This document shows positions 17,519-32,121 of a stretch of DNA of 64,000 bases, one piece after another; the first letter of the stretch is position 1, and every line of letters begins with the position of its first letter. Position numbers and translations under genes: made by a program. The notes beneath the pieces are model-generated. The model did not search any database. It was not told where the DNA came from and worked only from the letters and a program-made list of their open reading frames with translations. Location: IMG/VR virus record IMGVR_UViG_3300005253_001115, positions 202,641 to 266,640 of that record; one strand, 5' to 3'.

Positions 17519-18460
17519 ATGGAACGAAAACCAAAACCCGAACTAGACAGAGATTTTATTGTTGACCAGTTGGAGCGAGTTTGCTCAGATACCAAGATCC
17601 ACCGGCATGATATAGCCATCCCCTGTCCATTCAAGGCCCACTCCAATCCCAAGCCGTCCTGCATGGTACACCTATCCGGCCACAAGACCGGAGTGGGCGT
17701 GTTCCATTGCTGGAAGTGCGATGCTAAGGGCGGGTGGCCCCGACTAGCCGAGGCTCTGGGCCTGGAATACGGCGAGAACTACGCTCCCCAGAACCCCTTT
17801 AGTGCAAAAAGCCGCGCCATGAAGCAAATTCGGGCGGATGCCGACGAGCAGCTTGAGGCCCGGTATCGCGATTTCATGCCTCTTGGGGTGACACCTTGGG
17901 AGCATGGAGCCTTTCGAGGGCTGCCAGAAGAGTTTCTAGTCAAGGTCGGGGCGAAGAGGTTCTACGACGACCAGACCGAGTGTTACCGAATCGTATTCCC
18001 CGTTAAGAACAAGAACGGGACCACGTTGGGTAGCGTTGCTCGAAGGACTGACAAGGGCACCTTCATGCCCTGGCTTAACGCTCCCGGACCCTGGGCTCGG
18101 CGAGCGCTGTTCCCTCTACACATCTTGGATCGGCCCCTGGAAACCGTGGTTCTGGTTGAGGGTTCTTTCGACTCTCTGCGCCTCTGCTATCTGGGAATCC
18201 CTGCCCTCTCCATCCTCGGAGCATCTAATTGGACGCCCACCAAACTGAGTACACTGCAAGGTATGGGCTGCAAGAAGCTCATCATCTGTATGGACGGTGA
18301 TAAAGCAGGTCGAATAGCTGAGGCACAGATCTTCGAGGAAACAGCAGACAAGATCAAGCGCAAGAGGTTCCGGTTGCCCATCAACGTAGCAGATCCCGTT
18401 GACCCAGGTAACATGAACGAGGAGTTGATCGAGGCTCTCAGAGAGTTCGGCGGCTTTTAG
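17519..18460 (+). CDS. DNA primase (Zn finger + TOPRIM)
   Basis: CPFKAH...HCWKC, VEGSFD, MDGDKAG, DPG. Confidence 0.88.
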   Translation: MERKPKPELDRDFIVDQLERVCSDTKIHRHDIAIPCPFKAHSNPKPSCMVHLSGHKTGVGVFHCWKCDAKGGWPRLAEALGLEYGENYAPQNPFSAKSRAMKQIRADADEQLEARYRDFMPLGVTPWEHGAFRGLPEEFLVKVGAKRFYDDQTECYRIVFPVKNKNGTTLGSVARRTDKGTFMPWLNAPGPWARRALFPLHILDRPLETVVLVEGSFDSLRLCYLGIPALSILGASNWTPTKLSTLQGMGCKKLIICMDGDKAGRIAEAQIFEETADKIKRKRFRLPINVADPVDPGNMNEELIEALREFGGF

Positions 18461-21400
18461 GGGGAATCTATAGTTCGGTTAGACACGTCCATGTTGACAC
18501 CGCTCAAATCAATCAGCGTGCTGTGGTTGCCCGTATCCTCACCAATATTAGCGATATTTTGGCCTAGCTGCCACCAGTGCAGCAGAGTGGCGGAAGACAC
18601 GTAACTGCCAGAGTCAGTGAGCAAGTCGAATCCCGTAGAGCCGCCATTGTAAATTGCGGTCACCTCACCCGCCGTTAGTGCATTGCTCCACATGGACATT
18701 TGGTGATTGACACCCGGCCATTCAGTGCCACCGAAAGCGGCAGTGCCGCCTATTTCCACAAGCCGAACGATGGTATTGTCCTGAGGCCCAAGATTGTCCT
18801 TAGAAGCAGAATCCGCCACTCCTTGGTCAACTCCGTCAATGTAGAGTGTTACAGGGTCCCCGCCAACTGCTCCGTCGTAGGTGAATACGAAGTGAATCCA
18901 AGTGTCATCTGGTATCACATTGAACCATTCCAAATCCTTGAACTCAAAACCCCCAGGTTGGTTCGCATTGATTTGGATGCGTCCATTGGGCTGTGCAAGA
19001 ACAGGTGTCTTGGTTTGGATAGTGATCGAGTTCCCTGCCGCCGTGGCTCGCCACAATACGTCAAATGTGGAAGAGGTAATTTGATCGTTCTTGATCCAAC
19101 CCATGATGCTCCAAGCATCCACTGAACCCAGATCCTTGGCGATCCCTCCGGTCATGTACTCGTCAGTACCGTTGAAGACCAGACTGAAACTGGTCGGGGA
19201 TGAACCGTCCACAGACCCGGGAGCGTCTCCCAGAACGATGACTGTTCCGTTCTCTACCGTCATTGATCTGACGTTTATGCCGCGCATAGTGTTCATGAAG
19301 TCCCTTCCCTTCAGAAAGGTATCTTCGCCCAGCTTGTGGTAGTGTTGTAGGTTAGCTCCACTAACGTACTCATTCTTGTTATACCGGAGGTCAAGACCGT
19401 GACCTAGTGATGCAACTGTGCGCGCTTCGTTTGCACTTAGAGCCGAGTCCCACATCCCCACATGGCTGATCTTACCGGTGAAGGCTAGACCGGCCGAAGC
19501 TGCTAGCACCTCGTTAGAACCGCCCAGCTCCACGAAGCGTGACGAGTCAATCATAGTACCGGCGTTTGTTGTATCCACAACAGGAGCTACGAACCCTCCG
19601 TTATAGTACATCGTGATAAAGTTGTCGAACCATACCATGGTGACATGTTGCCACTCTCCCTCCACTAGAAGGTTGTTGTACCTAACACGCTGCAACACTG
19701 TACCTGCCGAATCGGTGACTTGCAGGATAAGTGGCTTTTGTGCGTCGTCGGCGTCAATTTGCCATGTGATCTCATTGGCGGACAGACCTGCTTGTGCTGG
19801 TCCCACGAACACGGGGTACTGCATGCCTGCACTAAGATCGTTCGGCTTTATCCAGGCTGAAATAGTCCACGAGTTGACCAAACCAATGGGAAGGGCTGTT
19901 GCGGTTGCAAGGTTGGCAGTGTCATCAAAGTCTGCGCAGTTACCCACTAGGCTGGTCTCGATGATGCCACGGTTACGCATCTCGGCACCAACCCCAGTCT
20001 GTTCCGTGGAGATGGTGTATCCACCCGGTACACGATCAGGGAACTGTGTATCTCCTGCGGGATGTGTTAGGCTGGCTGAAGGGTCTCCAAGCACCCACCA
20101 GTGTACCAAGGACGGAGCCTCACCGTAGCACGGGTGCTCTACACGAAGATCTAGATTCTTCCAACCACCACTATAGACTGCCTTAACCCCGTTTTCCGTT
20201 ACAGGAACAGACCACAGAGCTACAGAGTGTAGATCACCGTCAAACTGGTCGTTGACGCCTCGGCCATCGTAAAGGAAGTGGGTGCTTCGGGAAACGTTCG
20301 TTGTCGAGACAATACCACCGATCACAGGAGGCAGGTCATCCAGCCCATTAACAAAGAACCTAGCCGAGAACGTATCCTGCTTGCAGCCGAGGATATGGTA
20401 CCACTGATCCTCTACTACCGGAGTGGTTCCTGTCAGAACGTTGAACGTCCCTGCCGCGTTGGAGAACTCGTACTCCCAAAAAGACACGCCGCCAGATGTG
20501 ACAAGACTGAGAGCGATCTGGTCGAAGTTGCTGATGCCGTTAGTGACTCGCCAAACTTCCCGAGTAACGCCCTCAGCAGGAAGGCTTGTGGGCTTGACCC
20601 AGGCGGCAACTGTATGAGCGTTACCGACACCCTGAAACTTGTCGGTCTCGCCAACGGTACCTGCTGCATCCTTACGGTAGAAAGATCCTTCAGGAGCAGA
20701 ACGACGAACCTTTTCCGCTGTCTGCGTGCTATCAACATCAGGGATAGCTGTAGGAGCAAAGTTTGTGTGGACGGCACTACTAGGGGAGTCCCCATACCTG
20801 TACCACGTCTCTAGGTTGCCGTTACTGACGTAATCTCCGTGCCCCAGATTGAAATCGACATCGGTGCCAGAACCAGCATTGTAAATGGTTGAGATCTCGG
20901 CTTGCCCCAGTGGAAGGTTCCAGTGTGCGTGCGAATGGATGAAACCTTCAAACTTCTGGGCGAGGGAGGGGGTGTGAAGATTCCCCGCCGTGATGGACCG
21001 CAGTGTGTTGGTCTGGCTACCTGAGATGTCCGTCACGTTCGTCATGTAGGAGTTCATGTTAAGGCCGTTACGATAGACCGTCAGGGTCGCGCCGTCCCAG
21101 GTAACAACAATCTGGTGCCAGGAATTAACCCCGAAGAAGAACCCGTCTACTCCCGCCGTGTCGGTGTCTTCGACAGCGATCTGTCGCTTCTTGAAGACGG
21201 TGCCACCAGAGTTGTACATTGTGACGGAGAAGATGCCGCCCGTCTCAATAGCGATATCTAAAGAATTGGTAAGGCCACCGTTAAGAGTACCCATGCTGTA
21301 GATGGTTTGGTTGCTGGCAGGGGACAGAGAGGTGGGGGCGCACCAAACCATGTGGGTCCAAGCGTTAGTTACGTTTAGATCCGAGTCACCAGAAATAACA

Positions 21401-21552
21401 GCGGAGTCGCTGGTGCCGTTGAAGAACATGGCGGCGTTGTGGTGCGTCTTGGACTGGGGGTTCGCCAAAAAACTGTTCGAGCGATTACACGACTGGGTAG
21501 GCTGGCCACCTCCGAGTAGTCGGTACGGGATATCTCCTGCAAGTCTAGGCAT
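18457..21552 (-). CDS. Protein with about four LamG/concanavalin-A-like jellyroll domains (probable virion or receptor-binding protein)
   Basis: Repeated WT(I/H)xxWxK...WxHxxxTW..YxNG...F.G.I...WxxAL units. Confidence 0.75.
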   Translation of the reverse strand: MPRLAGDIPYRLLGGGQPTQSCNRSNSFLANPQSKTHHNAAMFFNGTSDSAVISGDSDLNVTNAWTHMVWCAPTSLSPASNQTIYSMGTLNGGLTNSLDIAIETGGIFSVTMYNSGGTVFKKRQIAVEDTDTAGVDGFFFGVNSWHQIVVTWDGATLTVYRNGLNMNSYMTNVTDISGSQTNTLRSITAGNLHTPSLAQKFEGFIHSHAHWNLPLGQAEISTIYNAGSGTDVDFNLGHGDYVSNGNLETWYRYGDSPSSAVHTNFAPTAIPDVDSTQTAEKVRRSAPEGSFYRKDAAGTVGETDKFQGVGNAHTVAAWVKPTSLPAEGVTREVWRVTNGISNFDQIALSLVTSGGVSFWEYEFSNAAGTFNVLTGTTPVVEDQWYHILGCKQDTFSARFFVNGLDDLPPVIGGIVSTTNVSRSTHFLYDGRGVNDQFDGDLHSVALWSVPVTENGVKAVYSGGWKNLDLRVEHPCYGEAPSLVHWWVLGDPSASLTHPAGDTQFPDRVPGGYTISTEQTGVGAEMRNRGIIETSLVGNCADFDDTANLATATALPIGLVNSWTISAWIKPNDLSAGMQYPVFVGPAQAGLSANEITWQIDADDAQKPLILQVTDSAGTVLQRVRYNNLLVEGEWQHVTMVWFDNFITMYYNGGFVAPVVDTTNAGTMIDSSRFVELGGSNEVLAASAGLAFTGKISHVGMWDSALSANEARTVASLGHGLDLRYNKNEYVSGANLQHYHKLGEDTFLKGRDFMNTMRGINVRSMTVENGTVIVLGDAPGSVDGSSPTSFSLVFNGTDEYMTGGIAKDLGSVDAWSIMGWIKNDQITSSTFDVLWRATAAGNSITIQTKTPVLAQPNGRIQINANQPGGFEFKDLEWFNVIPDDTWIHFVFTYDGAVGGDPVTLYIDGVDQGVADSASKDNLGPQDNTIVRLVEIGGTAAFGGTEWPGVNHQMSMWSNALTAGEVTAIYNGGSTGFDLLTDSGSYVSSATLLHWWQLGQNIANIGEDTGNHSTLIDLSGVNMDVSNRTIDSP

Positions 21553-21977: not shown

Positions 21978-22166
21978 ATGTCTAGAAAAGTCCAAATTCG
22001 GGTCGATCTCCCCCAGGAAGAATACGAGGCAGTCAAGCTGGTGGCGGGAAGCTCCGCTAGCGTCCCGGGCTACATGAGAAATGCTCTGAAGGAGCACATC
22101 GAGAGATGGCGAAGAAGTCTGGCTGGCACAAGCTCTTCGGTAGAGCCTACCACAAGGCAACGCTAA
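21978..22166 (+). CDS. Small ribbon-helix-helix-like protein
   Basis: Beta-strand KVQIRV followed by two helices; SD-like AAAGGAG upstream. Confidence 0.45.
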   Translation: MSRKVQIRVDLPQEEYEAVKLVAGSSASVPGYMRNALKEHIERWRRSLAGTSSSVEPTTRQR

Positions 22167-22396
22167 TGGCACCTGTGTATGAATATCTGTGTAACAAAGG
22201 CCACGAGACCGAGATAGAACAGCGAATCGTAGAGGATGCCCTCACGGTATGCCCTAAGAAGGGGTGCAGATGTAAGGCTAAGCGCCTGATTTCCCGAACG
22301 AATTTTCAGTTGAAGGGCAACGGCTGGTTCAACCAGGGCTACTCTGGTTCCAGCAACGTGGCCCCGACAACCAGGGCAAAAGCGAAGGGTAAATAG
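22166..22396 (+). CDS. FmdB-family zinc-ribbon protein
   Basis: MAPVYEYLC..GH...CP...RLIS..FQLKGNGWF. Confidence 0.8.
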   Translation: MAPVYEYLCNKGHETEIEQRIVEDALTVCPKKGCRCKAKRLISRTNFQLKGNGWFNQGYSGSSNVAPTTRAKAKGK

Positions 22397-22776: not shown

Positions 22777-23010
22777 CTCATGCGCGTACTCGGAGGGGCT
22801 AGGGCCTTCAATCCCATCGCCCGAGGGATCATGCCCCTCTATGCGCTCCACTAACCCGATCCTGGGGACATTATCATGTCCCAGGCTCATCAAGAAGATC
22901 ATCTAAAATGTCCATCACCTGAAGACAGACACCGTAGCCGCGAGCCGCCCTAGTTGTTCGATACGATCAATGTACTCTGTACACCAATCGAACATCTAAG
23001 GAGCGCTAAA

Positions 23011-23451
23011 ATGCGTACTGAAACAATCCGTGAAAACGGCTACTTCTACATCAAAGTCAAGATCCTCTCCCTGGCCGCAGAGGCCAAAATCATCCGCAAA
23101 CAAGAGCAGAAGGCTCGCGCACACGGGAATCGTTCCCTGCGCATTGGCCTTGCCGACCACCGTCGGGGCATCGTGCGTCACGAGGCGCGTCATGCCCAAC
23201 TGGCGTATGGCTTCCTTCGTGGTATGCCCTACAAGAGGATGGAGGCCAAGTGCCACCCCGGTTGTGGGCCGGACTTCGCCAAGGTGAAGTCTTCCATCGA
23301 GCGGTACGTCTGTGCCCGCCGGGAGATCGGCACAGAAGTGGACGAGTACGGCTACACTGTCACTAAGTGGGAGCCCATCGAGGAGTTCAATGCGCGTAAG
23401 GCGCAGCTCCTAGCTGACTTCGACAAGTGGGTGGCCGAAGCCAAGGCGTAG
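23011..23451 (+). CDS. Phage hypothetical protein (SLAAEAKIIR...LAYGFLRG type)
   Basis: SD AAGGAG before ATG 23011; followed by a hairpin. Confidence 0.65.
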   Translation: MRTETIRENGYFYIKVKILSLAAEAKIIRKQEQKARAHGNRSLRIGLADHRRGIVRHEARHAQLAYGFLRGMPYKRMEAKCHPGCGPDFAKVKSSIERYVCARREIGTEVDEYGYTVTKWEPIEEFNARKAQLLADFDKWVAEAKA

Positions 23452-23458
23452 CGAGAAG

Positions 23459-23479
23459 CCCGGGAGGGTGCCTCCCGGG
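23459..23479. terminator. Hairpin between convergent genes
   Basis: cccgggagg-gtg-cctcccggg. Confidence 0.6.
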
Positions 23480-23483
23480 TTAC

Positions 23484-24113
23484 CTACCCCACGCGAGAGG
23501 TAAAGACGTACTGTGCCATCACAGTGCTTCGTCCCATGTAGCAATAGTATTCGTAGTCCCGATTGAACCAGATATCTCTTTCCTTCTGAGAAAGCTTCTC
23601 TCCCAAGTTGTGAATGAAGTCTTCGGAATTCCAGCGATCATTGGAATACGCTGGGTTATTCAGCATAACGTTGACGCATAGCATGGTATTAAACGGGCAC
23701 CTGTGCATAGTGTTTACGGTCATGCTAACCAGTGCTGACGAGATAGCTGTACTGGTGGTATCCAAATACACCAAGGCGGGGTTAAATGCTGACAGGTTCG
23801 TTGACAGCACCATATCCCACATGCCGTAAAACCATTCGGCCTCAGGCCAACACAGCCTGTTACCTAGAATGAACTCTTCATTGTTATCCACACCCCGAAG
23901 CTGCTCGGCGGTGGCCAAACCAGAAGCCACAATCTGTGCAGATTCAGAATTGGTTCTGGTTTGCTTGTTGCACAAGAACCAGTATTGGCGGTCCAGCGGA
24001 ATAACGTAACCGAACACTTTCATGTACAGATTGAACAGCCACGCTCGGGCCGCTATCTTTTCATCGTTGTTGTATTCTTCTAGCATATTATGCTCCTCTG
24101 GTGTTGAAGACAT
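23484..24113 (-). CDS. Hypothetical protein, possibly a Rossmann/MTase-like fold
   Basis: GVDNN and LVYLD resemble SAM-MTase strands 2 and 4; last gene of the helicase operon. Confidence 0.4.
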   Translation of the reverse strand: MSSTPEEHNMLEEYNNDEKIAARAWLFNLYMKVFGYVIPLDRQYWFLCNKQTRTNSESAQIVASGLATAEQLRGVDNNEEFILGNRLCWPEAEWFYGMWDMVLSTNLSAFNPALVYLDTTSTAISSALVSMTVNTMHRCPFNTMLCVNVMLNNPAYSNDRWNSEDFIHNLGEKLSQKERDIWFNRDYEYYCYMGRSTVMAQYVFTSRVG

Positions 24114-24954
24114 CAGTGTATCCTCGTTTTTTAGCGAGCTTCAAGAGCTTAGGTCCGTAGAGAGGCCAACCATCTTTGTTGTTCTTTTTCTTCTCTCTCA
24201 TAGTAGAGAGCTTATTTCCTAGGGACTTCTCTACATGATCCTTAGAGACAGTGCTAGGAGCCCTGTCTTCGTGAGAATTCATCCACAGGAAAAGCTCTTC
24301 AGCCCATTCTAGAGCTTCACGGGTTAGATCGACCCTATTGAAAACAGCAGGGTAACCCCGTTTCTTAGCAAGCTTCATGAGCTTAGAACCATAGATAAGC
24401 CAGCCTCTTTTGTTGTTCTTTTTGATGTCTCTCATAGTAGAGAGTTTGCTTCCGAGAGCTTTCTCTACTGTGTCTTTAGACACAGCGCTAGGAGTCTTAC
24501 TTTCGTGAGAATCCATCCACTCGAAAAGTTCTTCGGCCCGGGCCATAGCTACCTTGGTAAGATCGGTTCTGTTGAAGACATCAAGATAACCACGTTTTTT
24601 AGAGAGCTTTAGAAGCTCTGATCCGTAGATAGGCCAGCCCTCTTTGTTGTTCTTCTTGTTGGTTCTCATCTTAGAAAGCTTTCTACCTAGAACCTTTTCT
24701 GTCCGGTCTTTGGATTTCTGACTAGGAATCTTGCCTCCGTGGGAATCCATAAAGGAGAAAAGAGTTTTGGCCCACTCTATCGCTGAAGCAGTAAGATCCC
24801 CATCAGAGTCAGACAAGAACCACGCCAAGTCTTCGGCGTTTCTTTCCCAATACACCATGTCTTCGGGTCTATGTGAAGACGGCAAGCCTTTGTCGTACCT
24901 GTGTCTCTGGTTCCTAAGGTACACGGCGTAGTTGTCGTATGCTTCAGTGTTCAT
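24088..24954 (-). CDS. Helicase-associated (HA)-like repeat protein, 3 repeats
   Basis: About 79-aa repeat W..ELF.WMDSH.GK.PS..SKD..EK.LG.KLS.MR. Confidence 0.7.
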   Translation of the reverse strand: MNTEAYDNYAVYLRNQRHRYDKGLPSSHRPEDMVYWERNAEDLAWFLSDSDGDLTASAIEWAKTLFSFMDSHGGKIPSQKSKDRTEKVLGRKLSKMRTNKKNNKEGWPIYGSELLKLSKKRGYLDVFNRTDLTKVAMARAEELFEWMDSHESKTPSAVSKDTVEKALGSKLSTMRDIKKNNKRGWLIYGSKLMKLAKKRGYPAVFNRVDLTREALEWAEELFLWMNSHEDRAPSTVSKDHVEKSLGNKLSTMREKKKNNKDGWPLYGPKLLKLAKKRGYTDVFNTRGA

Positions 24955-25826
24955 CTGGAGCCTCTGGTGTTGAAGACACGGGGATAACCACGTTGCTTAG
25001 CAAGCTTCAACAGTTTTGCACCGTAGGTGGTCCAACCATCTTTGTTGTTCTTTTTTCTTCTTTTCATATTAGAAAGCTTAGTTCCTAGAACCTTTTCTAC
25101 TGGGTCTGTAGACATCTGGCTGGGAGCCTTTCCACCGTGGGAATCCATCCAATCAAAAATCTCACCAGCTCCCTTTAGGGCTTCACTGTTTAGATCAATA
25201 GTGTCAAAGACATCTTGGTAACCACGTTTCTTAGCGAGCTTCAAGAGCTTAGGTCCGTAGAGTTTCCAACCACCCCTGTTGTTCTTTTTCTTCCTTCTCA
25301 TGTCGGAGAGCTTACTTCCTAGAGCTTTTTCTACCGGGTCTTTAGAAGACATTCTAGGAGTTTTTTCGTCGTGAGAGTCCATCCAACCGAAAAGCTCTTT
25401 TGCCCACTCTAGAGCTTCTCTGGTTAGATCTGTGGTGTTGAAGACATCAGGGTAACCACGTTTCTTAGCGAGCGTCAGAAGCTCTGATCCGTAGGTAGTA
25501 GTCCAACCACCCCTGTTGTTCTTTTTGTTATGTCTCCAATATGACAGCTTAGTTCCTAGAACCTTTTCTACTTGGTCTATAGACCCCTGGGTGGGAGCCT
25601 TTCCGCCGTGGGAATCCATCCAATCAAAAACCTCACCAGCTCCCCTTAGAGCTGAGGTAACAAGTCCCACGTCAGTGTCGGACAAGAACCACGCCAAGTC
25701 CTCAGGATTCCTTTCCCAGTACACTATGTCTTCTGGTTTGTGCGAAGACGGCAAGCCGTTGTCATACCGGCGTCTCTGGTTCCTCAAGTGTAGAGCATAG
25801 TTGTCGTATTTGTCGGAGGCTAGCAT
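24951..25826 (-). CDS. HA-like repeat protein, 3 repeats
   Basis: Paralogue of its neighbours with the same N-terminal leader and repeats. Confidence 0.7.
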   Translation of the reverse strand: MLASDKYDNYALHLRNQRRRYDNGLPSSHKPEDIVYWERNPEDLAWFLSDTDVGLVTSALRGAGEVFDWMDSHGGKAPTQGSIDQVEKVLGTKLSYWRHNKKNNRGGWTTTYGSELLTLAKKRGYPDVFNTTDLTREALEWAKELFGWMDSHDEKTPRMSSKDPVEKALGSKLSDMRRKKKNNRGGWKLYGPKLLKLAKKRGYQDVFDTIDLNSEALKGAGEIFDWMDSHGGKAPSQMSTDPVEKVLGTKLSNMKRRKKNNKDGWTTYGAKLLKLAKQRGYPRVFNTRGSR

Positions 25827-27178
25827 TTGGAGCCTCCGGTATTGAAGACACAGGGGTAACCTCGTTGCTTGGCGAGCTTCAGAAGCTTAGAACCGTAGGT
25901 GGTCCAACCATTTTTGTTGTTCTTTTTGTTCTTTCTCATATTGGAGAGCTTAATCCCTAAAGCCTTTTCTACTGGGTCTTTGGACCTCCTGCTAGGAAAT
26001 TTCTCTTCGTGAGCATACATCCAATCGAAAAGTTCGTCAGCCCACTCTAGAGCCTCGCTGGTTAGATCAACCCTGTTGAAGACACGGGGGTAACCACGTT
26101 TCTTAGCAAGCTTCAAGAGCTTAGAGCCGTAGGTAGTCCAGCCATCTTTGTTGTTCTTTTTGTTCTTTCTCATATTGGAGAGCTTACTGATAAGAGCTTT
26201 TTCCACTGGATCTTTGGACCTTTCCTTAGGAACTTTGCCTCCATGGGAAGCCATCCAATCAAAAAGCTCCTCTGCCCATATTAGAGCCTCGCTGGTTAGA
26301 TCAACCCTGTTGAAGACACGGGGGTAACCACGTTTCTTAGCAAGCTTCAAGAGCTTAGAACCATAGGTAGTCCATCCTCTATCGTTATTCTTTTTGATCT
26401 GTTTCATAGCGGAGAGCTTGACCCCTAAAGACTTTTCTACAGGGTCTTTAGCCGTCGTAATTGGAGCTTTACCTTCGTGCGAGTCCATCCAAAGGAAAAG
26501 CTCTTCAGCCCACTCTAGAGCGTTATAGGTTAGATCAGCCATGTTGAAAACATCAGGATAATCACGTTTCTTAGCAAGCTTCAGAAGCTCTGATCCGTAG
26601 ATGGGCCAGCCTCTATTGTTGCTCATTTGATTCTGCCTCATAGTAGAAAGCTTACTACCTAGAGATTTTTCTATAAGATCTTTGGACTTCTTGCTAGGAA
26701 GCTTGTCCTCGTGCGAGTCCATCCAAAGGAAAAGCTCTTCAGCCCACTCTAGAGTTTCGCTGATGGGGTCACGACTATTGAAAACATCAGGATAACCCCG
26801 CTTCTTAGCGCTCTTTAAGAGGCTGGAACCGTAGGTAGTCCAACCATTTTTGTTGCTTTTTTTATCTTGTTTCGTATTGGAGAGCTTACTACCTAGAGCT
26901 TTTTCTACAGGGTCTTTGCTTCCATCGCGGGGAGCCTTGCCCTCGTTAGAGTCCATCCAAAGGAAAAGCTCTTCAGCCCGCTCTAGAGCTGAAGCGGTAA
27001 GGTCCCCACTAGAGTCAGACAAGAACCATGCTAGGTCTTCGGCGTTTCTTTCCCAGTACACGATGTCTTCGGGTATGTGAGAAGATGGCAAGCCATTTTC
27101 GTACCTGACACGCTCGTTGCGCAGGAACTTAGCCTTGGCGTCGAAAAAGTCTTCCTTGCTCTTCTCAGTCCTACGCAT
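25820..27178 (-). CDS. HA-like repeat protein, 5 repeats
   Basis: Paralogue of the two downstream genes. Confidence 0.7.
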   Translation of the reverse strand: MRRTEKSKEDFFDAKAKFLRNERVRYENGLPSSHIPEDIVYWERNAEDLAWFLSDSSGDLTASALERAEELFLWMDSNEGKAPRDGSKDPVEKALGSKLSNTKQDKKSNKNGWTTYGSSLLKSAKKRGYPDVFNSRDPISETLEWAEELFLWMDSHEDKLPSKKSKDLIEKSLGSKLSTMRQNQMSNNRGWPIYGSELLKLAKKRDYPDVFNMADLTYNALEWAEELFLWMDSHEGKAPITTAKDPVEKSLGVKLSAMKQIKKNNDRGWTTYGSKLLKLAKKRGYPRVFNRVDLTSEALIWAEELFDWMASHGGKVPKERSKDPVEKALISKLSNMRKNKKNNKDGWTTYGSKLLKLAKKRGYPRVFNRVDLTSEALEWADELFDWMYAHEEKFPSRRSKDPVEKALGIKLSNMRKNKKNNKNGWTTYGSKLLKLAKQRGYPCVFNTGGSKC

Positions 27179-29057
27179 TGGAGGGCCTTATTCTCTTACG
27201 GTCCCAGAACTCATCACGCCAGTCCTTGCAAATTTCGTAGAACTTCTTCAACTCTTTCTCTGAAAAGCTTCCGTAGTGTGTGGTCTTGTCCTTATCAATC
27301 CTCTCGAACAACACCTCACCGTATTTCTTCAAGAACTCAGCAAGCTCTTTGTAGCAGGCCACACGGATCTTCTTGGCACCGAACAAATTCAAGAGCTTGA
27401 GCTTGAAATGGTCGGCAGCATGCTGCATGTGCTCCTCTGGGGTGTTGTATTGCACCAAGAGCTTCTCGATAAACAGGACTATATGCTCCATGTCCGTCAG
27501 ACCCTCGGGCTTCGGGGCACATCTATACTCTTCCAGAACAGCCCCCAGAAGCCTCTGGTACACCTCATGACCGTACATATCCTCGATTGTAGTGGCGTCG
27601 GGATCGCTCTCGCCCCGAGCTGACTTAGTTTTCATCGAAGGCAGCATACAAGGGTACGCCAAATTATCAACAATCAGGAAGAACAGCAGAATACGAGTAC
27701 GGTGCCCCAGAAGCTCCGCTCGGCTAGAGCAGCCTTTAGGGATTACGAACTTGGGAATGTAAGCCACGTACTTGACTGTAGTCTTTCCGTGAAACGATCG
27801 GAACATTCGACCCATCGTCTGGATGTTGTTCGTAATGGACTTCTTGGGAGCCGACTCGTGAATACGGTCGCAAATGACCCAATCTGTACCCTCACGCACG
27901 ATGTCGCAAGCAACCACGATGTCGAAAGCGTGCGCGTCCCCTCGCTGGAGAGCTTCGTTGTCCTCCAGCAAAAGGTGCTTGTTAAAGTCTCGTTCGGATG
28001 CTGACAACCCTTCTCTGATTACCAGATCACAAATTCGCCCAGGCTTTAGAGCCTTGAGCCCTTTGATTAGCTTTCGCAGTAGCTTTTCTCCCTTGGCACC
28101 CTTCCTCCACGCTTCTCCCGTTCGCGGACAAGGCAGCAGGTGATATCTGTTAGGCTCCTGTGCTACAGCGTCAAGCATCATCTGCACAGGGTCTCTATTG
28201 TACTCCGTGTATTCCATCTTGAATGATCGAATACCCAAAGTCTTCCAGTTGTCCAGCCATTTGTGTTCGTACACCGTGAACTGTACGTCGTCCGGGAAGA
28301 TCTTCTGGCAATCCCCACGAAACGGAGTAGCAGTGCTGTAGCAGACCTTGTACGACTTGCACCGGCTAGCGAACAAAAACCGATAGAATCGCCCCAGACC
28401 GTTAATGTCTGATTCGTCAGAAGAGGCAATGTGGTGCATTTCGTCGGGGCGGAATGTGGTGTTCTTGGGGATGCTATTGAGGCGCGCTCTTGCGGCCTTT
28501 CGCTCAGCCGCGCTCCCTTCCAGGGTCCGTGCCACCAATCTGTCGAACACAGCAACCAGTAGCGCATTTGAACATACTGCCACGAGCCCCCTGAAGCTGT
28601 CAGGGTCCTTACATGCTCCACGCTTTGCGGCGGACGTAAGGCACATCCAGTGCTCCAGAGCGTCCATCTTGGACTCTAAAGAGGAAAAGTCTCGCGTGAA
28701 GTTCTCGCTGTCGCTCACCATGTATTTGTATACTGGACCATCAACATCAAATTGGAAGTCTTGCTTCTTGACGAAGCCGAAGCCAATGTGCAGTTGGGGG
28801 ACTGGGATCAACTGGGCTTGGGTGAAGTTACTATCCACCATGTCTAGAATTGACATGAAGATCTGAAATGTGGTCTTACCACATCCGCAGGGTGCAATTA
28901 TCCCACACAAGCGGCAGCCATGCAGAGCTTCAACGCCCATTCGCTGCCATTCGCGAGGCCAACGCTTCTTCATGTATTCGGAGAAAGAGGGGAGTGGAGG
29001 CTTGTGCAGTTTCCAGTCCGGGTTGTCCAGAGCAACTGTAGCGAGATTCTTTGGCAT
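27171..29057 (-). CDS. Superfamily 2 (Res-like) helicase/ATPase
   Basis: APCGCGKT, DEMHH, STATP, EGTD, QTMGR. Confidence 0.8.
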   Translation of the reverse strand: MPKNLATVALDNPDWKLHKPPLPSFSEYMKKRWPREWQRMGVEALHGCRLCGIIAPCGCGKTTFQIFMSILDMVDSNFTQAQLIPVPQLHIGFGFVKKQDFQFDVDGPVYKYMVSDSENFTRDFSSLESKMDALEHWMCLTSAAKRGACKDPDSFRGLVAVCSNALLVAVFDRLVARTLEGSAAERKAARARLNSIPKNTTFRPDEMHHIASSDESDINGLGRFYRFLFASRCKSYKVCYSTATPFRGDCQKIFPDDVQFTVYEHKWLDNWKTLGIRSFKMEYTEYNRDPVQMMLDAVAQEPNRYHLLPCPRTGEAWRKGAKGEKLLRKLIKGLKALKPGRICDLVIREGLSASERDFNKHLLLEDNEALQRGDAHAFDIVVACDIVREGTDWVICDRIHESAPKKSITNNIQTMGRMFRSFHGKTTVKYVAYIPKFVIPKGCSSRAELLGHRTRILLFFLIVDNLAYPCMLPSMKTKSARGESDPDATTIEDMYGHEVYQRLLGAVLEEYRCAPKPEGLTDMEHIVLFIEKLLVQYNTPEEHMQHAADHFKLKLLNLFGAKKIRVACYKELAEFLKKYGEVLFERIDKDKTTHYGSFSEKELKKFYEICKDWRDEFWDRKRIRPSNA

Positions 29058-29067
29058 GTCAGGTATA

Positions 29068-29092
29068 TCGACCCCGAGCTGAGAATCTTGAG
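29068..29092 (-). promoter_or_regulatory. Sigma28-like phage promoter (CTCAAG-N15-TCGA, 10 nt before ATG)
   Basis: One of 13 copies of CT(C/A)A(A/T)G-N15/16-(C/T)CGA upstream of minus-strand starts. Confidence 0.65.
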
Positions 29093-29130: not shown

Positions 29131-29151
29131 GGCCCCGGGAGACCGGGGGCC
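29131..29151 (-). terminator. GC-rich hairpin downstream of 29165-30190
   Basis: ggccccgg...ccgggggcc, followed by GUUUCUUU on the minus strand. Confidence 0.55.
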
Positions 29152-29164
29152 ACGGGCGCGTCGC

Positions 29165-30190
29165 CTAGGAAAGGAGCTTTTCAATCCTCTCTTCCGTTCG
29201 TTCGCGCTTCCCGCTCTTTCCCGACGTGATGTCAGGGATCAACCCATCCAGCTTGAAGCCGTGCTTGTTGAGCTTCGCCGCGAAAATCTTCGTGGACCGG
29301 ACGCTCAGGCACTTTTTGCCAGCGACGTGCCACATCATCAGCAGCCCGATGAAAGCCGTCTTTTTGAGAGGGATGGCACCAGAGTTCTTGTCCACATTGG
29401 CGCAAACACCCTCGATCCACTGCATCGCAGCAATGATCTTCTGGCGATTGGCGGGGGAAAGGCCAACAGGGGAGACGGTAGCGGACTCGCCTGCCTGCGG
29501 ACCCACCTGACTACGCAAAGGAAACACATCTGAATAGTTGCCGGATACGGGAACGCTTCCCCTGGTCGCCAGGTACTCGATGATGTAAGCAAGCTGGATG
29601 GTCTCCGTCTTTCCTACTTGGGCGATGCCCGCCCTGATCGCCATGTCTAGGATGATATCCCCGTAGCGAAGAAGGGGATTGGAGGTCTTCTCACCCGTGT
29701 TGTGCGACCGGTTGGTATTGAGGATCGAGTAGACTTGCTGGAACTCCGTAGCAGGAACAATGGAAAGCGAAACAACAGTCCGCAGGTCGGAGGCCGACAA
29801 CACACCTGCCTCGTAGGCTGCCATCAGCCCGCCAATGGTTCGATTGTGTCCATCAGCCAGCTTGATGTAAGGCTTTCCCTGCTCGTCCTTGAACACGGCC
29901 CCTGTGATTTGTCCGAAGGCTGCCGCACAGAAGTCCGAGACCATCTTTTTGATGAGCCTGGGACTGAATTGGTCTCCAGTCCCTCGATTGAACTCGAACG
30001 GCTTGATGCGCCTGTGAATGATGTTCTGGATCAGAGCGTCCAGAGTAAACACCCAAAGGTTTTTGGAGCCACCTTCTTTGATAGAAGCCGCTTTGGCGAA
30101 GCCAGGAGTGAGGGGAAAATCGTGCAGACAGTCGAACCCTTTGATGGCTTTCGCAGCCGCTTCTACGTCAATGTAGGTCTTACCACTCAT
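29165..30190 (-). CDS. ParB/DGQHR-like domain protein
   Basis: FNRG...KKMV, LADGHNRT, Y..LN. Confidence 0.55.
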   Translation of the reverse strand: MSGKTYIDVEAAAKAIKGFDCLHDFPLTPGFAKAASIKEGGSKNLWVFTLDALIQNIIHRRIKPFEFNRGTGDQFSPRLIKKMVSDFCAAAFGQITGAVFKDEQGKPYIKLADGHNRTIGGLMAAYEAGVLSASDLRTVVSLSIVPATEFQQVYSILNTNRSHNTGEKTSNPLLRYGDIILDMAIRAGIAQVGKTETIQLAYIIEYLATRGSVPVSGNYSDVFPLRSQVGPQAGESATVSPVGLSPANRQKIIAAMQWIEGVCANVDKNSGAIPLKKTAFIGLLMMWHVAGKKCLSVRSTKIFAAKLNKHGFKLDGLIPDITSGKSGKRERTEERIEKLLS

Positions 30191-30945
30191 CCTTGTTCTC
30201 CTTCGGCTTTCAGCCTATTTTCAGCAATTTCAAAAAAACTCTCGTCCATCTCGAAACCCAGTCCAACCCTGTTGGTTCTCTGGGCTGCCAGAAGCGTCGT
30301 ACCCGATCCTGCGAATGGATCGAGCACTGTAGCACCTTCTTGGGTCATCCACAAGAGGAATTGTTTAGCGAGCGCCACCGGTTTCTGTGTGGGGTGTCCG
30401 CACTTCTCCTTGCTTCCCAGAGTAAACACCCAATCTTCAATCTCCGATATTCTCTTGCGCTCTACTAACTCACCTTTCCTCTTCACATCTATGGGGTTGA
30501 GAGAAGGCTTGCCTTTGGCAAGGTAGATAATTGGTTCCCAGTCCCGCTTCGCGGCACCTTTCAAATCACCGCCGATAGCGAACCGCTTGTTCCAGGCGAT
30601 TGTTCCTTTGTACGTGAACCCCGACCGTTTTATGTTCTCCCAACGCTGTCCCAAGAAGGGCGGATTAGCGTGCAGCACGCAATAACTGTCGTCTTTCAAC
30701 ACCCTGAAGCACTCTGAGAAGAAGTCGTCCCAGGCAATAGCGGCGTTCTCTTCCGGTTCGTCCCCCGCGATGGGTTTTGAGAAACGGCTCTTAGATTCGC
30801 CGGATTTGTTCCAATTTTTCGATCCGGGTATATTTGAAACGTACCCAAGGCCATACGGTGGGTCCGTCAATACCAGATCCACAGACCCCTCTGTCACCTT
30901 CGGCAACAGGTCTTCCCACCTACCCCAGTGCATTCCGTTTAGCAT
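30187..30945 (-). CDS. N4C/N6A DNA methyltransferase (beta class)
   Basis: DLVLTDPPY ... HPTQKP ... VLDPFAGSGTT. Confidence 0.92.
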   Translation of the reverse strand: MLNGMHWGRWEDLLPKVTEGSVDLVLTDPPYGLGYVSNIPGSKNWNKSGESKSRFSKPIAGDEPEENAAIAWDDFFSECFRVLKDDSYCVLHANPPFLGQRWENIKRSGFTYKGTIAWNKRFAIGGDLKGAAKRDWEPIIYLAKGKPSLNPIDVKRKGELVERKRISEIEDWVFTLGSKEKCGHPTQKPVALAKQFLLWMTQEGATVLDPFAGSGTTLLAAQRTNRVGLGFEMDESFFEIAENRLKAEGEQG

Positions 30946-30958
30946 ACTCCTCTTTAGT

Positions 30959-31678
30959 CTACCACTCTACAAGAGTGCCGAGGGATGTTTTTGCTTCTTC
31001 AAGAATCTTCTCCGCTTCCTCCAAAGAAGTAAAAGTGCCAAGAGAAAGGACAACCCGGTACTGGTCTTCGAGCCCAGCCACCCGTTTTTTTCCTTTGTGG
31101 CTAAGGGGTTTTGTGGTAGCTTTTTGCCTGTAAATCCCCGGAGGTAAATCTCTGTTAAGGGTTGTGCGCCTGTTGAGTGTTTGTTGCCTATGTGTTGCCC
31201 ACCGCAAATTACCGGGTTCATAGTTTCCGTCGTTGTTAATTCGATCAAGAGAGTGCTCTTCGGGGCGTGGTCCCAGGTTTTCCTCCAGCCACCGTATAAA
31301 CGCGCCTGCGTCGTCTATCCACGGCTCATACATCTTAATGCCACGAGCACTGTAGTAGGCATGATACTTGCGACTTTTTCCACCACATCTTTCTTTAATG
31401 GAACACCACAGAGAGTACATAGGATTCTTTCCTCCTACTGGACTATATCCGTGCTTCTGTCTGTGCATATTTGCGCCGCAACTTTTGGTTACACCACTCA
31501 CACAATTGCCCAAATATACAATTTTCTCGACACCGCATTCACATATAGTGGCGACCTGACGACCGTTCTTTATTGTGGGAAACACCTCGTGTAGTACGGT
31601 CAGGGTTCCATAGACATTCCCCACCACATCCTTAGGCAAGGAACTACGTCGGCGCTTCCAGTTTTCTCCTCGGGGCAT
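30959..31678 (-). CDS. HNH homing-endonuclease-like protein
   Basis: KSCG, Y..RGI, SLDRINNDGNYEPGNLRWAT. Confidence 0.8.
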   Translation of the reverse strand: MPRGENWKRRRSSLPKDVVGNVYGTLTVLHEVFPTIKNGRQVATICECGVEKIVYLGNCVSGVTKSCGANMHRQKHGYSPVGGKNPMYSLWCSIKERCGGKSRKYHAYYSARGIKMYEPWIDDAGAFIRWLEENLGPRPEEHSLDRINNDGNYEPGNLRWATHRQQTLNRRTTLNRDLPPGIYRQKATTKPLSHKGKKRVAGLEDQYRVVLSLGTFTSLEEAEKILEEAKTSLGTLVEW

Positions 31679-31695
31679 GTAAATTCCTAGTTCGC

Positions 31696-32121
31696 CTATA
31701 TCTTCGCCACCTTCGCACATTTGTCGCACTTCTGCCTATGGATTTTGGCGTACCCAAATAGCTCATGGCTACAGTCAGTACCTGTGCAGAACACTCGGTG
31801 CTCGCCAGCGTTGGGCGTAATGGCAAACAGGTCTCCGGGTCCAGCCTCCGAGGGTTTCACCTTCGTGAACCACCCATCGGCGTTCAAGTCTGCCAGGAAC
31901 CGGGAGAGCTTGCCTCGCGTGGACAGATGCCCGCCCCCGCTCTTGAAGCCAGAAATGCGCTCGTAATCGCCTTTCTTCAACTTCTCAATCCAGATGTAAA
32001 CAAAAGTCCGCTCGCCGTTCATGTCCGTGATCCAAAGGCTATCGGGATTGATCCCGAACTCCTTGGCAATGAAGTCAGTCCATTTGTGAGTGAACTCTTT
32101 TGCTTTCTTTGTAACGGGCAT
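31696..32121 (-). CDS. Hypothetical protein with C-terminal Cys motif
   Basis: ATG overlaps the NUDIX stop. Confidence 0.5.
   Translation of the reverse strand: MPVTKKAKEFTHKWTDFIAKEFGINPDSLWITDMNGERTFVYIWIEKLKKGDYERISGFKSGGGHLSTRGKLSRFLADLNADGWFTKVKPSEAGPGDLFAITPNAGEHRVFCTGTDCSHELFGYAKIHRQKCDKCAKVAKI

What the first reader, a model, noticed from the sequence alone, without database searches (positions are those of the whole stretch)
23484..29092. SF2 helicase operon with three paralogous modular repeat proteins (11 repeats) and an MTase-like gene
Seen: five overlapping genes behind one promoter: a Res-like helicase, three paralogues sharing a ~55-aa leader (RY..GLPSSH.PED.VYWERN.EDLAWFLSD) with 5, 3 and 3 copies of a ~79-aa basic repeat, and a possible MTase-fold protein. 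Repeats vary mostly around P-x-x-x-SKD and KLS-x-x-R/K. Established: HA domains are usually fused to SF2 helicases and are predicted to bind nucleic acid. Inference: exchangeable, recombination-diversified specificity subunits that dock on the helicase through the shared leader, possibly a restriction-like or inter-phage competition system.
Basis: partly seen in the sequence, partly recalled or inferred. Interest (0 to 1): 0.65.

Follow-up and report, generated by a model that had tools for sequence, protein, structure and literature searches.

The report
Phage helicase with detachable HA-repeat adaptors
A marine-sediment jumbo phage carries a conserved but unstudied three-part gene set: a motor helicase, three interchangeable-looking proteins built from nucleic-acid-binding "HA" repeats, and a methyltransferase-shaped protein; relatives fuse these parts into single proteins, so they most likely work as one machine whose job is still unknown.

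Summary
Five co-directional minus-strand genes (23484-29057) encode a DExH SF2 helicase, three paralogues (452, 291 and 288 aa) and a ~200-aa protein. Each paralogue has a 77-81% identical ~50-aa leader followed by 5, 3 or 3 copies of a 78-aa (234-nt) basic three-helix repeat.

The repeats belong to the HA family. They fall below Pfam's cut-off, but a profile-profile comparison with Pfam-verified HA units gives 98% probability. The solved HA domain 2KTA ranks 2nd of 48,161 chains.

Gene 5 has a class I SAM-methyltransferase fold but lacks the glycine-rich motif I.

The helicase, the leader proteins and the gene-5 family recur together in about 17 other large-phage loci. Relatives fuse the array to the helicase C-terminus, and one fuses gene 5 to its N-terminus. 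The same leader also carries other payloads (INT_rpt repeats, non-repeat domains). In distant relatives the leader is HA helices 2-3, and the gene boundary appears to split an HA domain.

So "modular adaptors for one motor" is well supported by comparison. Docking was not shown: the complex prediction gave no verdict. Nothing supports a restriction function, because no nuclease and no defence-family match were found. This is a new variant of a known kind, and its function is open.

The parts
29133..29148 (-). GC-rich hairpin (CCCCGG..CCGGGG) followed by a T-rich tail. It lies between the upstream 341-aa ORF and the helicase gene and is the likely upstream boundary of the unit.
27171..29057 (-). 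SF2 DExH helicase/translocase, 628 aa (P0001). Motifs: I CGCGKT, II DEMHH, III TATPFRGD, V REGTDW, VI QTMGRMFR. It has a ~170-aa helical C-terminal domain and no nuclease domain.
27011..27178 (-). Leader of R5 (aa 1-56). The start codon overlaps the helicase stop by 8 nt (CCAATGCGTAG).
25841..27010 (-). R5 array: five 78-aa HA-family repeats (aa 57-446 of P0002).
25820..27178 (-). Gene R5 (452 aa, pI 9.55). A 99%-identical assembly (L006) has 4 repeats instead of 5.
24951..25826 (-). Gene R3a (291 aa): leader aa 1-51 (25674-25826) and three repeats aa 52-286 (24969-25673).
24088..24954 (-). Gene R3b (288 aa): leader aa 1-50 (24805-24954) and three repeats aa 51-284 (24103-24804). In the AF2 model each repeat is three helices with pLDDT >90; the leader is at pLDDT 54-63.
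23484..24086 (-). Gene 5, 200 aa from the likely start (the alternative ATG is at 24113). Class I SAM-methyltransferase fold, acidic (pI 4.9). Motif I is LCNxQ rather than GxGxG. The Asp at the end of strand 2 (GVD) is invariant.
23459..23479 (.). Perfect 9-bp GC-rich hairpin (CCCGGGAGG-CAC-CCTCCCGGG) just after the gene 5 stop, between convergent genes. It is the likely downstream boundary.

Best explanation
This is a conserved, uncharacterised three-part module of large phages.

Part 1 is an intact DExH SF2 ATPase/translocase.

Part 2 is a set of adaptor proteins. Each has a ~45-55-aa N-terminal leader followed by a variable nucleic-acid-binding payload. Here the payload is an array of a 78-aa, basic, three-helix subtype of the HA (helicase-associated, PF03457) domain.

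Part 3 is a ~200-aa class I methyltransferase-fold protein.

Shown: the homologies, the folds, the synteny and the natural fusions.

Inferred: the three parts act as one complex. The repeat arrays tether or target the motor on DNA or RNA, and the MTase-fold subunit acts on the substrate that the motor exposes.

In this phage the array has been separated from the helicase and triplicated (5+3+3 repeats). The three genes would then give alternative adaptors that compete for one motor.

The most likely docking mode is completion of a split HA domain. In distant relatives the helicase ends in an HA helix-1-like tail (W...Y/W...K...EKG) and the next gene begins with HA helices 2-3. For the window's own, more diverged leader this is positional inference only.

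The biochemical end-product is unknown. My preferred guess is modification or remodelling of phage nucleic acid.
For: Repeat = HA family:
- A profile of 25 repeats finds 1062 proteins at E<=1e-3. These include proteins that Pfam scores as HA arrays at E 3e-105, 4e-73 and 6e-98.
- hhalign against those units gives 98%, E 1.4e-13; the reversed control gives 0.2%.
- 2KTA is rank 2 of 48,161 chains: Z 5.1, 74 residues aligned, 22% identity.

Natural fusions:
- Helicases of this clade carry the repeats C-terminally in P0024, P0099, P0105, P0139, P0148, P0150, L015 and L021.
- P0008/L026 fuses the helicase C-terminus, the window-type leader and 3 repeats in one frame.
- L017 fuses gene 5 and the helicase in one ORF.

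Synteny:
- All loci fetched through the gene-5 family have the helicase adjacent (5 of 5: L010-L014).
- All seven viral contigs fetched through the helicase have gene 5 within 2.5 kb (L015-L021).
- L007, L008, L023, L024 and L026 show the same pairing.

Modularity:
- The window-type leader precedes INT_rpt repeats in P0014, P0010 and L026 gene 2.
- The broad leader precedes HA-like arrays, non-repeat domains (P0233, P0234) or a third repeat type (Tunturi_5 gp98/gp99).
- There are 1-4 such genes per locus.

Leader:
- Broad leader vs HA helices 2-3: 98.1%, E 6.4e-14.
- The helicase HMM aligns the tail Trp of unfused helicases with the helix-1 Trp of the first HA unit in fused P0099.

Helicase motifs I, II, III, V and VI are invariant in six homologues.

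Gene 5: AF2 pLDDT 92; at least 500 PDB methyltransferase hits at probability 1.0.
Against: - No direct evidence of binding: the complex prediction returned no verdict.
- The window-type leader is not significantly similar to HA or to the broad leader (hhalign 0.5-0.9%).
- The helicase tails are not significantly HA-like (0.3%). The split-domain idea therefore rests on one fused relative and visual colinearity.
- Gene 5 lacks the GxGxG SAM loop and matches no Pfam, NCBIfam or PHROG family, so it may not be a methyltransferase at all.
- The cultured relative Tunturi_5 has the helicase and adaptors but no gene 5 anywhere in its genome, so the third part is dispensable in at least one lineage.
- Nucleic-acid binding by this HA subtype is untested.
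Confidence: 0.6

Rival explanations
1. Anti-restriction or self-protection machine. The helicase plus MTase-fold protein travels along phage DNA and modifies or shields it from host restriction, and the repeat arrays provide DNA grip. This would be functionally like P1 DarB (methyltransferase plus helicase) or a nuclease-less type I/III enzyme. The comparison comes from my own knowledge and was not tested here.
For: - An SF2 motor is consistently paired with, and once fused to, an MTase-fold protein.
- The module sits among DNA metabolism genes, next to an N6/N4 DNA methyltransferase and an HNH endonuclease. L008 also has an N6_N4 MTase nearby.
- No nuclease is present, which fits protection rather than attack.
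Against: - Gene 5 has none of the DNA amino- or C5-methyltransferase motifs and no family match.
- Its structural neighbours are a mix of small-molecule, protein and RNA methyltransferases.
- The adjacent DNA MTase is not conserved with the module.
Confidence: 0.15
2. Restriction-like or inter-phage exclusion system with exchangeable specificity subunits.
For: - The helicase resembles ResIII-type motors.
- Several alternative adaptor genes recall exchangeable specificity subunits.
Against: - No nuclease domain was found in any of the five proteins by Pfam, PHROGs, NCBIfam or PADLOC.
- No PADLOC family matched the helicase or gene 5.
- The 'Cmr5' scores on the repeat proteins have no individual significant stretch and reflect repeat composition.
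- 'ResIII' is a generic SF2 N-terminal domain, not evidence of restriction.
Confidence: 0.07
3. The repeat proteins are free-standing DNA- or RNA-binding proteins (nucleoid-like or regulatory). They merely sit in the same operon as the helicase. The leader is a degenerate half-repeat with no docking role.
For: - Most relatives of the 78-aa subtype are stand-alone arrays.
- One cluster member is labelled 'predicted transcriptional regulator' by its source.
- The leader is modelled at low confidence.
- The window leader has no significant similarity to HA.
Against: - Repeated independent fusions of arrays to this helicase clade, including one through the window-type leader.
- The start codons overlap the helicase stop in every locus examined.
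- The leader stays conserved while the payload is swapped.
Confidence: 0.13

Closest known systems
ResIII-Helicase_C-HA(n) helicases (Pfam PF03457 'helicase associated domain'). The solved unit is 2KTA, B. vulgatus A6KY75/BVU_0683; Mills et al. 2013 is cited as ref. 64 in PMC12191111.
   Same: An SF2 motor combined with tandem three-helix HA units. The first two helices of the window repeat align with HA at 98% probability. The same helicase clade occurs fused to 4-6 such units.
   Different: - The array here is on separate genes, in three paralogous copies, behind a dedicated leader.
- The unit is 78 aa, with a different third helix (YGxKLLKLAKKRGYPxVF instead of L..LE.I.GW.W).
- It scores below Pfam's cut-off (12 vs 28.4 bits).
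- An MTase-fold partner gene is conserved alongside.
INT_rpt (PF14882) repeat proteins and ResIII+INT_rpt phage helicases
   Same: They occupy the same slot. The window-type leader precedes INT_rpt arrays in L007 and L026. Helicases of this clade are fused to INT_rpt in L021 and in an Atlas cluster of 83 mostly viral proteins. L019 has helicase + three INT_rpt genes + gene 5, the same layout as the window.
   Different: It is a different repeat (~56 aa...HPDWPSxPxxxYxxWVSWxDLFG), and none is present in this window or genome.
Motor-plus-methyltransferase enzymes: type I / type III restriction-modification enzymes and phage P1 DarB (from my own knowledge, not tested)
   Same: An SF2 translocase is combined with a Rossmann methyltransferase-fold subunit and a separate, exchangeable nucleic-acid-recognition part (compare HsdS).
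   Different: No nuclease is present. Gene 5 lacks DNA-MTase motifs and the glycine-rich SAM loop. Recognition would be by helical repeat arrays, not TRDs. No PADLOC match was found.
T4 UvsW / UvsW.1 (from my own knowledge, not tested)
   Same: A phage SF2 helicase whose small C-terminal helical piece is encoded by a separate gene immediately downstream.
   Different: No sequence relation was tested or seen. UvsW.1 is a single small protein, not a repeat array, and it has no MTase partner.
TALE / PPR / Pumilio helical repeat arrays (analogy only)
   Same: Tandem helical units with variation concentrated at a few positions on one helix face (positions 34, 38, 41, 45, 48, 49).
   Different: There is no evidence of a one-repeat-one-base code. 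The variable face may simply be unconstrained surface.

Membership tests
HA domain (PF03457) | Scores above the Pfam gathering cut-off (28.4 bits) | tested here: not met
   Best score is 12.1 bits, E 0.25, on P0004. A six-frame search of the whole 266-kb genome with PF03457 found nothing.
HA domain (PF03457) | Profile-level homology to verified HA units | tested here: met
   hhalign of 25 repeats against 27 units from proteins that Pfam calls HA at E 1e-73 to 1e-105 gives probability 98.0%, E 1.4e-13 over 47 columns. The reversed control gives 0.2%. The repeat profile scores those proteins at E 5e-35 to 9e-53.
HA domain (PF03457) | Three-helix fold like the solved HA unit 2KTA | tested here: inconclusive
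   In the AF2 model each repeat is three helices at pLDDT >90. 2KTA is rank 2 of 48,161 chains with the highest identity in the list (22%) and all 74 residues aligned. However, Z is only 5.1 and rmsd 5.2 A, which is within the noise range for helical models. Foldseek with the whole model found nothing.
HA domain (PF03457) | Tandem copies associated with an SF2 helicase | tested here: met
   The arrays sit immediately downstream of the helicase with overlapping start and stop codons. Fused forms occur in P0008, P0024, P0099, P0105, P0139, P0150 and L015.
HA domain (PF03457) | Binds nucleic acid | not testable with these tools
   Only indirect evidence: pI 9.55-9.75, and net charge 0 to +9 (most +3 to +9) per repeat. 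The title of the 2KTA paper reports 'domain binding to DNA' (PMC12191111 ref. 64); the paper itself is not held.
SF2 helicase (ResIII/DEAD + Helicase_C) | Conserved motifs I, II (DExH), III, V and VI | tested here: met
   CG(C/S)GK(T/S), DE(M/A/F/S)(H/Q)H (DExH in five of six homologues; DESQH in P0012), TATP(F/Y)RGD, REGTDW and QTxGRxFR are invariant or nearly so in six homologues at 31-55% identity.
SF2 helicase (ResIII/DEAD + Helicase_C) | Family HMM match | tested here: inconclusive
   Pfam Helicase_C gives 17 bits against a cut-off of 23.5. PHROG_16 'DNA helicase' gives E 1.3e-10. The fused homologue P0024 (E 3.5e-47 to the clade HMM) hits ResIII, DEAD and Helicase_C above cut-off. Atlas neighbours are all DEAD/ResIII clusters at 0.95-0.98.
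Restriction enzyme (type I/III Res) or other known defence system | Nuclease domain, or a match to a defence-system model | tested here: not met
   No nuclease family was found in any of the five proteins. There was no PADLOC match for the helicase or gene 5.
Class I SAM-dependent methyltransferase | Seven-stranded Rossmann-like fold | tested here: met
   AF2 pLDDT 92.3, pTM 0.90. At least 500 PDB hits at E<=1e-3, all methyltransferases, with TM 0.5-0.6. The Atlas model gives TM 0.65-0.70 to MTase clusters. BFVD hits are likewise methyltransferases.
Class I SAM-dependent methyltransferase | Glycine-rich motif I (GxGxG) after strand 1 | tested here: not met
   The family consensus is YWxLCNxQP...E, with no glycines.
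Class I SAM-dependent methyltransferase | Acidic residue at the end of strand 2 (ribose contact) | tested here: met
   The GVD motif has an invariant Asp (D67 of P0164) at the end of strand E63-67 in 36 sequences.
Class I SAM-dependent methyltransferase | SAM binding and methyl transfer | not testable with these tools
   No Pfam, NCBIfam or PHROG family match. A biochemical assay is needed.

The most novel reading that the evidence does not exclude
One helicase-methyltransferase motor is re-targeted by swappable helical-repeat adaptors. The adaptors plug in by completing a split HA domain: helix 1 comes from the helicase tail and helices 2-3 from the adaptor leader. The repeats would read nucleic-acid sequence through the few variable residues on one face of helix 2. 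That would make a natural, programmable targeting system in jumbo phages.
Probability: 0.1. Interest if true: 0.85.

Novelty: new variant of a known kind. Interest (0 to 1): 0.58.

Why it matters
HA domains are a large Pfam family with one NMR structure and no established biology. This locus, with about 17 related ones, gives the family a testable context:
- a conserved partnership with one SF2 helicase clade and an unstudied methyltransferase-fold family;
- natural fused and unfused versions that mark where the parts should touch;
- a leader that carries at least three or four different payload types.

If the adaptors really dock on the motor and confer target choice, this would be a new way for phages to direct a translocase or modifying enzyme, and a compact modular scaffold for engineering. 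If not, it is still a widespread unannotated gene set of large marine and soil phages. About 1060 repeat-protein cluster representatives match at E<=1e-3, and 71 gene-5 homologues were found. Current pipelines label these proteins 'hypothetical' or, misleadingly, 'DNA helicase'.

Tried and rejected
- Complex prediction (helicase 455-628 + R5 1-134): 'no answer', score 0.00. This is neither for nor against binding (after two busy refusals).
- Foldseek of the whole 288-aa R3b model against PDB: no match at E<=1e-3, only designed helical repeats.
- Repeat profile against PDB sequences: no significant hit; 2KTA was not found by sequence.
- Helicase against PDB sequences: only Walker-A-level hits.
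- hhalign of the window-type leader against HA, the broad leader and the Tunturi leaders: colinear but not significant (0.4-0.9%).
- hhalign of the helicase tails against HA or the repeat: not significant.
- Gene-5 profile against the Methyltransf_8 domain of the helicase-HA-MTase fusion P0033: unrelated (0.1%). That fusion is only an analogy.
- Sub-threshold Pfam, PHROG and PADLOC hits on the repeat proteins (HNOB, Urocanase, DUF1764, tail fibre assembly, Cmr5, PDC-M45C) have no individually significant stretch. I rejected them as summed repeat or composition noise.
- DNA search of the 7-kb region against 50,697 phage records: no match. The single-protein helicase scan of IMG/VR found nothing until an alignment was used.
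- Gene 5 tblastn against cultured phages: no match.
- Reads: only Logan contigs were available, and they break into 155-254-nt pieces inside R5. The 4-versus-5-repeat question could not be settled, and no RNA run holds the locus.
- Sigma-70 promoter scan: fewer sites than in shuffles and none credible.
- Gp23 family search of the genome: nothing rang, including in the controls, so it is uninformative.
- Literature: no paper on this module, on PF03457 biology beyond the NMR note, or on Tunturi_5. The NMR paper is not held.

Full report
CONTEXT

The window is bases 202,641-266,640 of a 266,640-bp IMG/VR viral record with a CheckV completeness estimate of 89%. It is a jumbo phage. The window carries T4-type replication and nucleotide-metabolism genes: ribonucleotide reductase, clamp loader, an SbcD-like nuclease, a UvsX-like recombinase, a sigma factor and a Toprim protein. 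It also carries a 1031-aa LamG-type virion protein. The same phage is present at 99-100% identity in marine-sediment metagenomes of 2015 and 2019.

THE OBSERVATION

Five minus-strand ORFs lie at 27171-29057, 25820-27178, 24951-25826, 24088-24954 and 23484-24113.

- Tandem Repeats Finder reports a 234-nt period with 4.9, 2.9 and 2.5 copies in the three middle genes.
- At protein level there are 5+3+3 units of 78 aa. They are 54-82% identical at protein level and 64-82% at DNA level, with 22 invariant columns.
- The three proteins share a leader that is 77-81% identical. They are basic, pI 9.55-9.75.
- Gene junctions overlap by 8, 7 and 4 nt.
- Gene 5 most probably starts at the ATG at 24086, one base after the R3b stop, behind GAGGAG. 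This matches the 200-aa call in a sister assembly and the homologue alignment.
- GC-rich hairpins at 29133-29148 and 23459-23479 bracket the unit.
- A single promoter could not be verified.

WHAT THE REPEATS ARE

Pfam does not call them. HA (PF03457) reaches only 12 bits against a cut-off of 28.4, and a six-frame scan of the genome with PF03457 is empty.

An exhaustive profile search with 25 repeats gave a different picture. It found 1062 cluster representatives at E<=1e-3 and 390 at E<=1e-10. Among them are proteins that Pfam scores as HA arrays at E 3e-105 (P0039, ResIII + Helicase_C + 9 HA), 4e-73 and 6e-98.

Profile-profile comparison of the repeat with 27 units cut from those proteins gives 98.0% probability and E 1.4e-13 over 47 columns, covering helices 1 and 2. 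The reversed control gives 0.2%.

AlphaFold2 models each repeat as three helices at pLDDT >90. In an all-against-all structural search the solved HA unit 2KTA ranks 2nd of 48,161 chains. All 74 of its residues align at 22% identity, but Z is only 5.1.

The repeat is therefore a divergent 78-aa subtype of the HA family. Its third helix (YGxKLLKLAKKRGYPxVF) differs from the canonical L..LE.I.GW.W.

THE HELICASE AND GENE 5

The helicase matches PHROG_16 'DNA helicase' at E 1.3e-10. Six homologues at 31-55% identity keep motif I, III, V and VI; motif II is DExH in five of the six (DESQH in P0012). Its language-model and structural neighbours are all DEAD/ResIII SF2 clusters. It has no nuclease domain.

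Gene 5 matches no family library. It folds with pLDDT 92 into a class I methyltransferase fold, with at least 500 PDB methyltransferase hits and TM 0.5-0.6. The Atlas model gives TM 0.65-0.70. The family has 71 homologues in the word-indexed search, almost all ~200 aa and viral. It keeps the Asp at the end of strand 2 but replaces the GxGxG loop by LCNxQ. Fold membership is therefore shown, and enzymatic activity is not.

COMPARATIVE EVIDENCE THAT THE PARTS BELONG TOGETHER

Loci fetched through the gene-5 family all have the helicase next door (L010-L014). Loci fetched through the helicase all have gene 5 within 2.5 kb (L015-L021). L007, L008, L023, L024 and L026 show the same pairing.

The arrays are fused to the helicase C-terminus in many relatives: P0024, P0099, P0105, P0139, P0148, P0150, L015, and L021 with INT_rpt. 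In L026 the helicase C-terminus, the window-type leader and three repeats are one reading frame that is open to the contig end. In L017, gene 5 and the helicase are one ORF.

Two exceptions were found. A canonical HA helicase of another clade (L025) and the cultured Tunturiibacter phage Tunturi_5 lack gene 5.

THE LEADER

The window-type leader recurs in front of INT_rpt-type repeats in L007 (P0014), in P0010 and in the second gene of L026. One locus therefore carries both payload types.

More distant loci use a leader of the form W..QR..Y..G.L....LE.IPGW.W. It precedes:
- HA-like arrays of 1-5 units, in up to four genes per locus (L010);
- non-repeat domains (P0233, P0234);
- a third helical repeat in Tunturi_5 gp99 and gp98.

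This broad leader is HA helices 2-3: hhalign 98.1%, E 6.4e-14, and Pfam HA positions 30-62 at E 0.0019 on P0011.

In the fused relative P0099, the clade HMM aligns the tail Trp of the unfused helicases with the Trp that opens helix 1 of the first HA unit. Written end to end, the helicase tail and downstream leader of L008, L010 and L012 are colinear with one HA domain. This suggests that the gene boundary cuts the first HA domain, and that docking happens by completing it.

Several caveats apply:
- The tails alone are not significantly HA-like.
- The window-type leader is colinear with, but not significantly similar to, HA or the broad leader.
- The leader is modelled at pLDDT 54-63.
- The complex prediction gave no verdict.

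REPEAT-NUMBER CHANGE

A second assembly from another sample (L006, a 100,743-bp contig) is identical over the five genes except for two differences. One is a synonymous change in R3b. The other is an exact in-frame 234-nt deletion in R5, whose junction lies in an 11-nt microhomology. It leaves four repeats.

This could be real unequal recombination or an assembly collapse. Logan contigs shatter inside R5 and cannot decide. A 90-95% relative in a 2024 sediment run has a contig that joins 24098 to 26088, which is 1989 nt shorter, but joints at this identity are weak evidence.

FUNCTION

Nothing points to restriction. There is no nuclease and no PADLOC match for the helicase or gene 5. The 'Cmr5' scores on the repeat proteins have no significant individual stretch. 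The neighbouring N6/N4 DNA methyltransferase, HNH endonuclease and 341-aa ORF are not conserved with the module, although L008 also has an N6_N4 methyltransferase nearby.

I commit to the following reading. The helicase, the adaptors and the MTase-fold protein form one complex. The HA arrays hold or target the motor on nucleic acid, and the three paralogues are alternative adaptors. Modification or remodelling of phage nucleic acid is my preferred end-function, but it is unproven. No paper in the held library describes this module.

VERDICT

This is a new variant of a known kind (HA-domain helicases): split, triplicated, leader-bearing, with a conserved MTase-fold partner.

Noticed in passing
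window 29165-30945 (-) and 30959-31729 (-): Directly upstream of the unit lie a 341-aa ORF with no family match, then (with a 4-nt overlap) an N6/N4 DNA methyltransferase (phrog_67 E 3e-53; PADLOC type II MTase), then an HNH endonuclease (phrog_374 E 4e-47). They are not conserved with the module in other loci, except for an N6_N4 MTase near L008.
   Followed up: partly
L026:1-2285: A short contig holds the helicase C-terminus fused in frame to the window-type leader and 3 HA-like repeats. Next comes a second gene with the same leader and 2 INT_rpt repeats, then gene 5. Both payload types therefore sit in one locus.
   Followed up: yes
L022 (Tunturiibacter phage Tunturi_5, PP885688.1 75742-79525): A cultured 308.7-kb soil phage has the helicase (gp100, E 8e-182). 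Two downstream proteins (gp99, gp98) carry an HA-half leader plus 5 and 3 copies of a third ~57-aa helical repeat. All three are annotated 'DNA helicase'. Gene 5 is absent from the whole genome.
   Followed up: partly
L017:3927-6887: One ORF carries the gene-5 family domain (residues 137-316) followed by the helicase (348-924). This is a natural MTase-fold/helicase fusion in a 222-kb viral contig.
   Followed up: partly
L019:4365-10464: A 147-kb viral contig has the same layout as the window, but with INT_rpt repeats: helicase, three repeat genes (4, 3, 5 units), then gene 5.
   Followed up: partly
window 24000-28000: G+C drops to 0.46-0.48 over the repeat genes, against ~0.53 in the flanks. 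This is probably the Lys/Asn-rich repeat coding, but it would also fit a cassette of different origin.
   Followed up: no
window 25820-27178 vs L006:10001-11125: A sister assembly has an exact one-repeat (234-nt) in-frame deletion with an 11-nt microhomology at nt 804-815 of R5. The rest of the five-gene unit differs by one synonymous base.
   Followed up: yes
window 24098-26088 (run X5): A 90-95% identical relative in a 2024 marine-sediment run has a contig that skips 1989 nt between gene 5 / R3b and R5. This hints at a shorter adaptor region in that relative, but it is weak evidence at this identity.
   Followed up: no
window 18457-21552 (-), 17519-18460 (+), 22106-22396 (+): A 1031-aa Laminin_G_3 / virion structural protein, a Toprim-domain protein and a small zinc-ribbon protein flank the unit. 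Between them, at 22954-23451 (+), lies a 165-aa ORF convergent with gene 5 that has no family match.
   Followed up: no
P0033 (989 aa): An unrelated lineage has Helicase_C + HA repeats + a C-terminal Methyltransf_8 domain in one protein. The MTase is not related to gene 5 (hhalign 0.1%). A helicase-HA-methyltransferase combination therefore seems to have arisen more than once.
   Followed up: partly
gene 5 model (mfc1b62610dc4): The best viral structural neighbours are MTase-fold proteins of giant viruses that also carry chromo domains (Tetraselmis virus 1, Hyperionvirus; TM 0.66-0.67).
   Followed up: no
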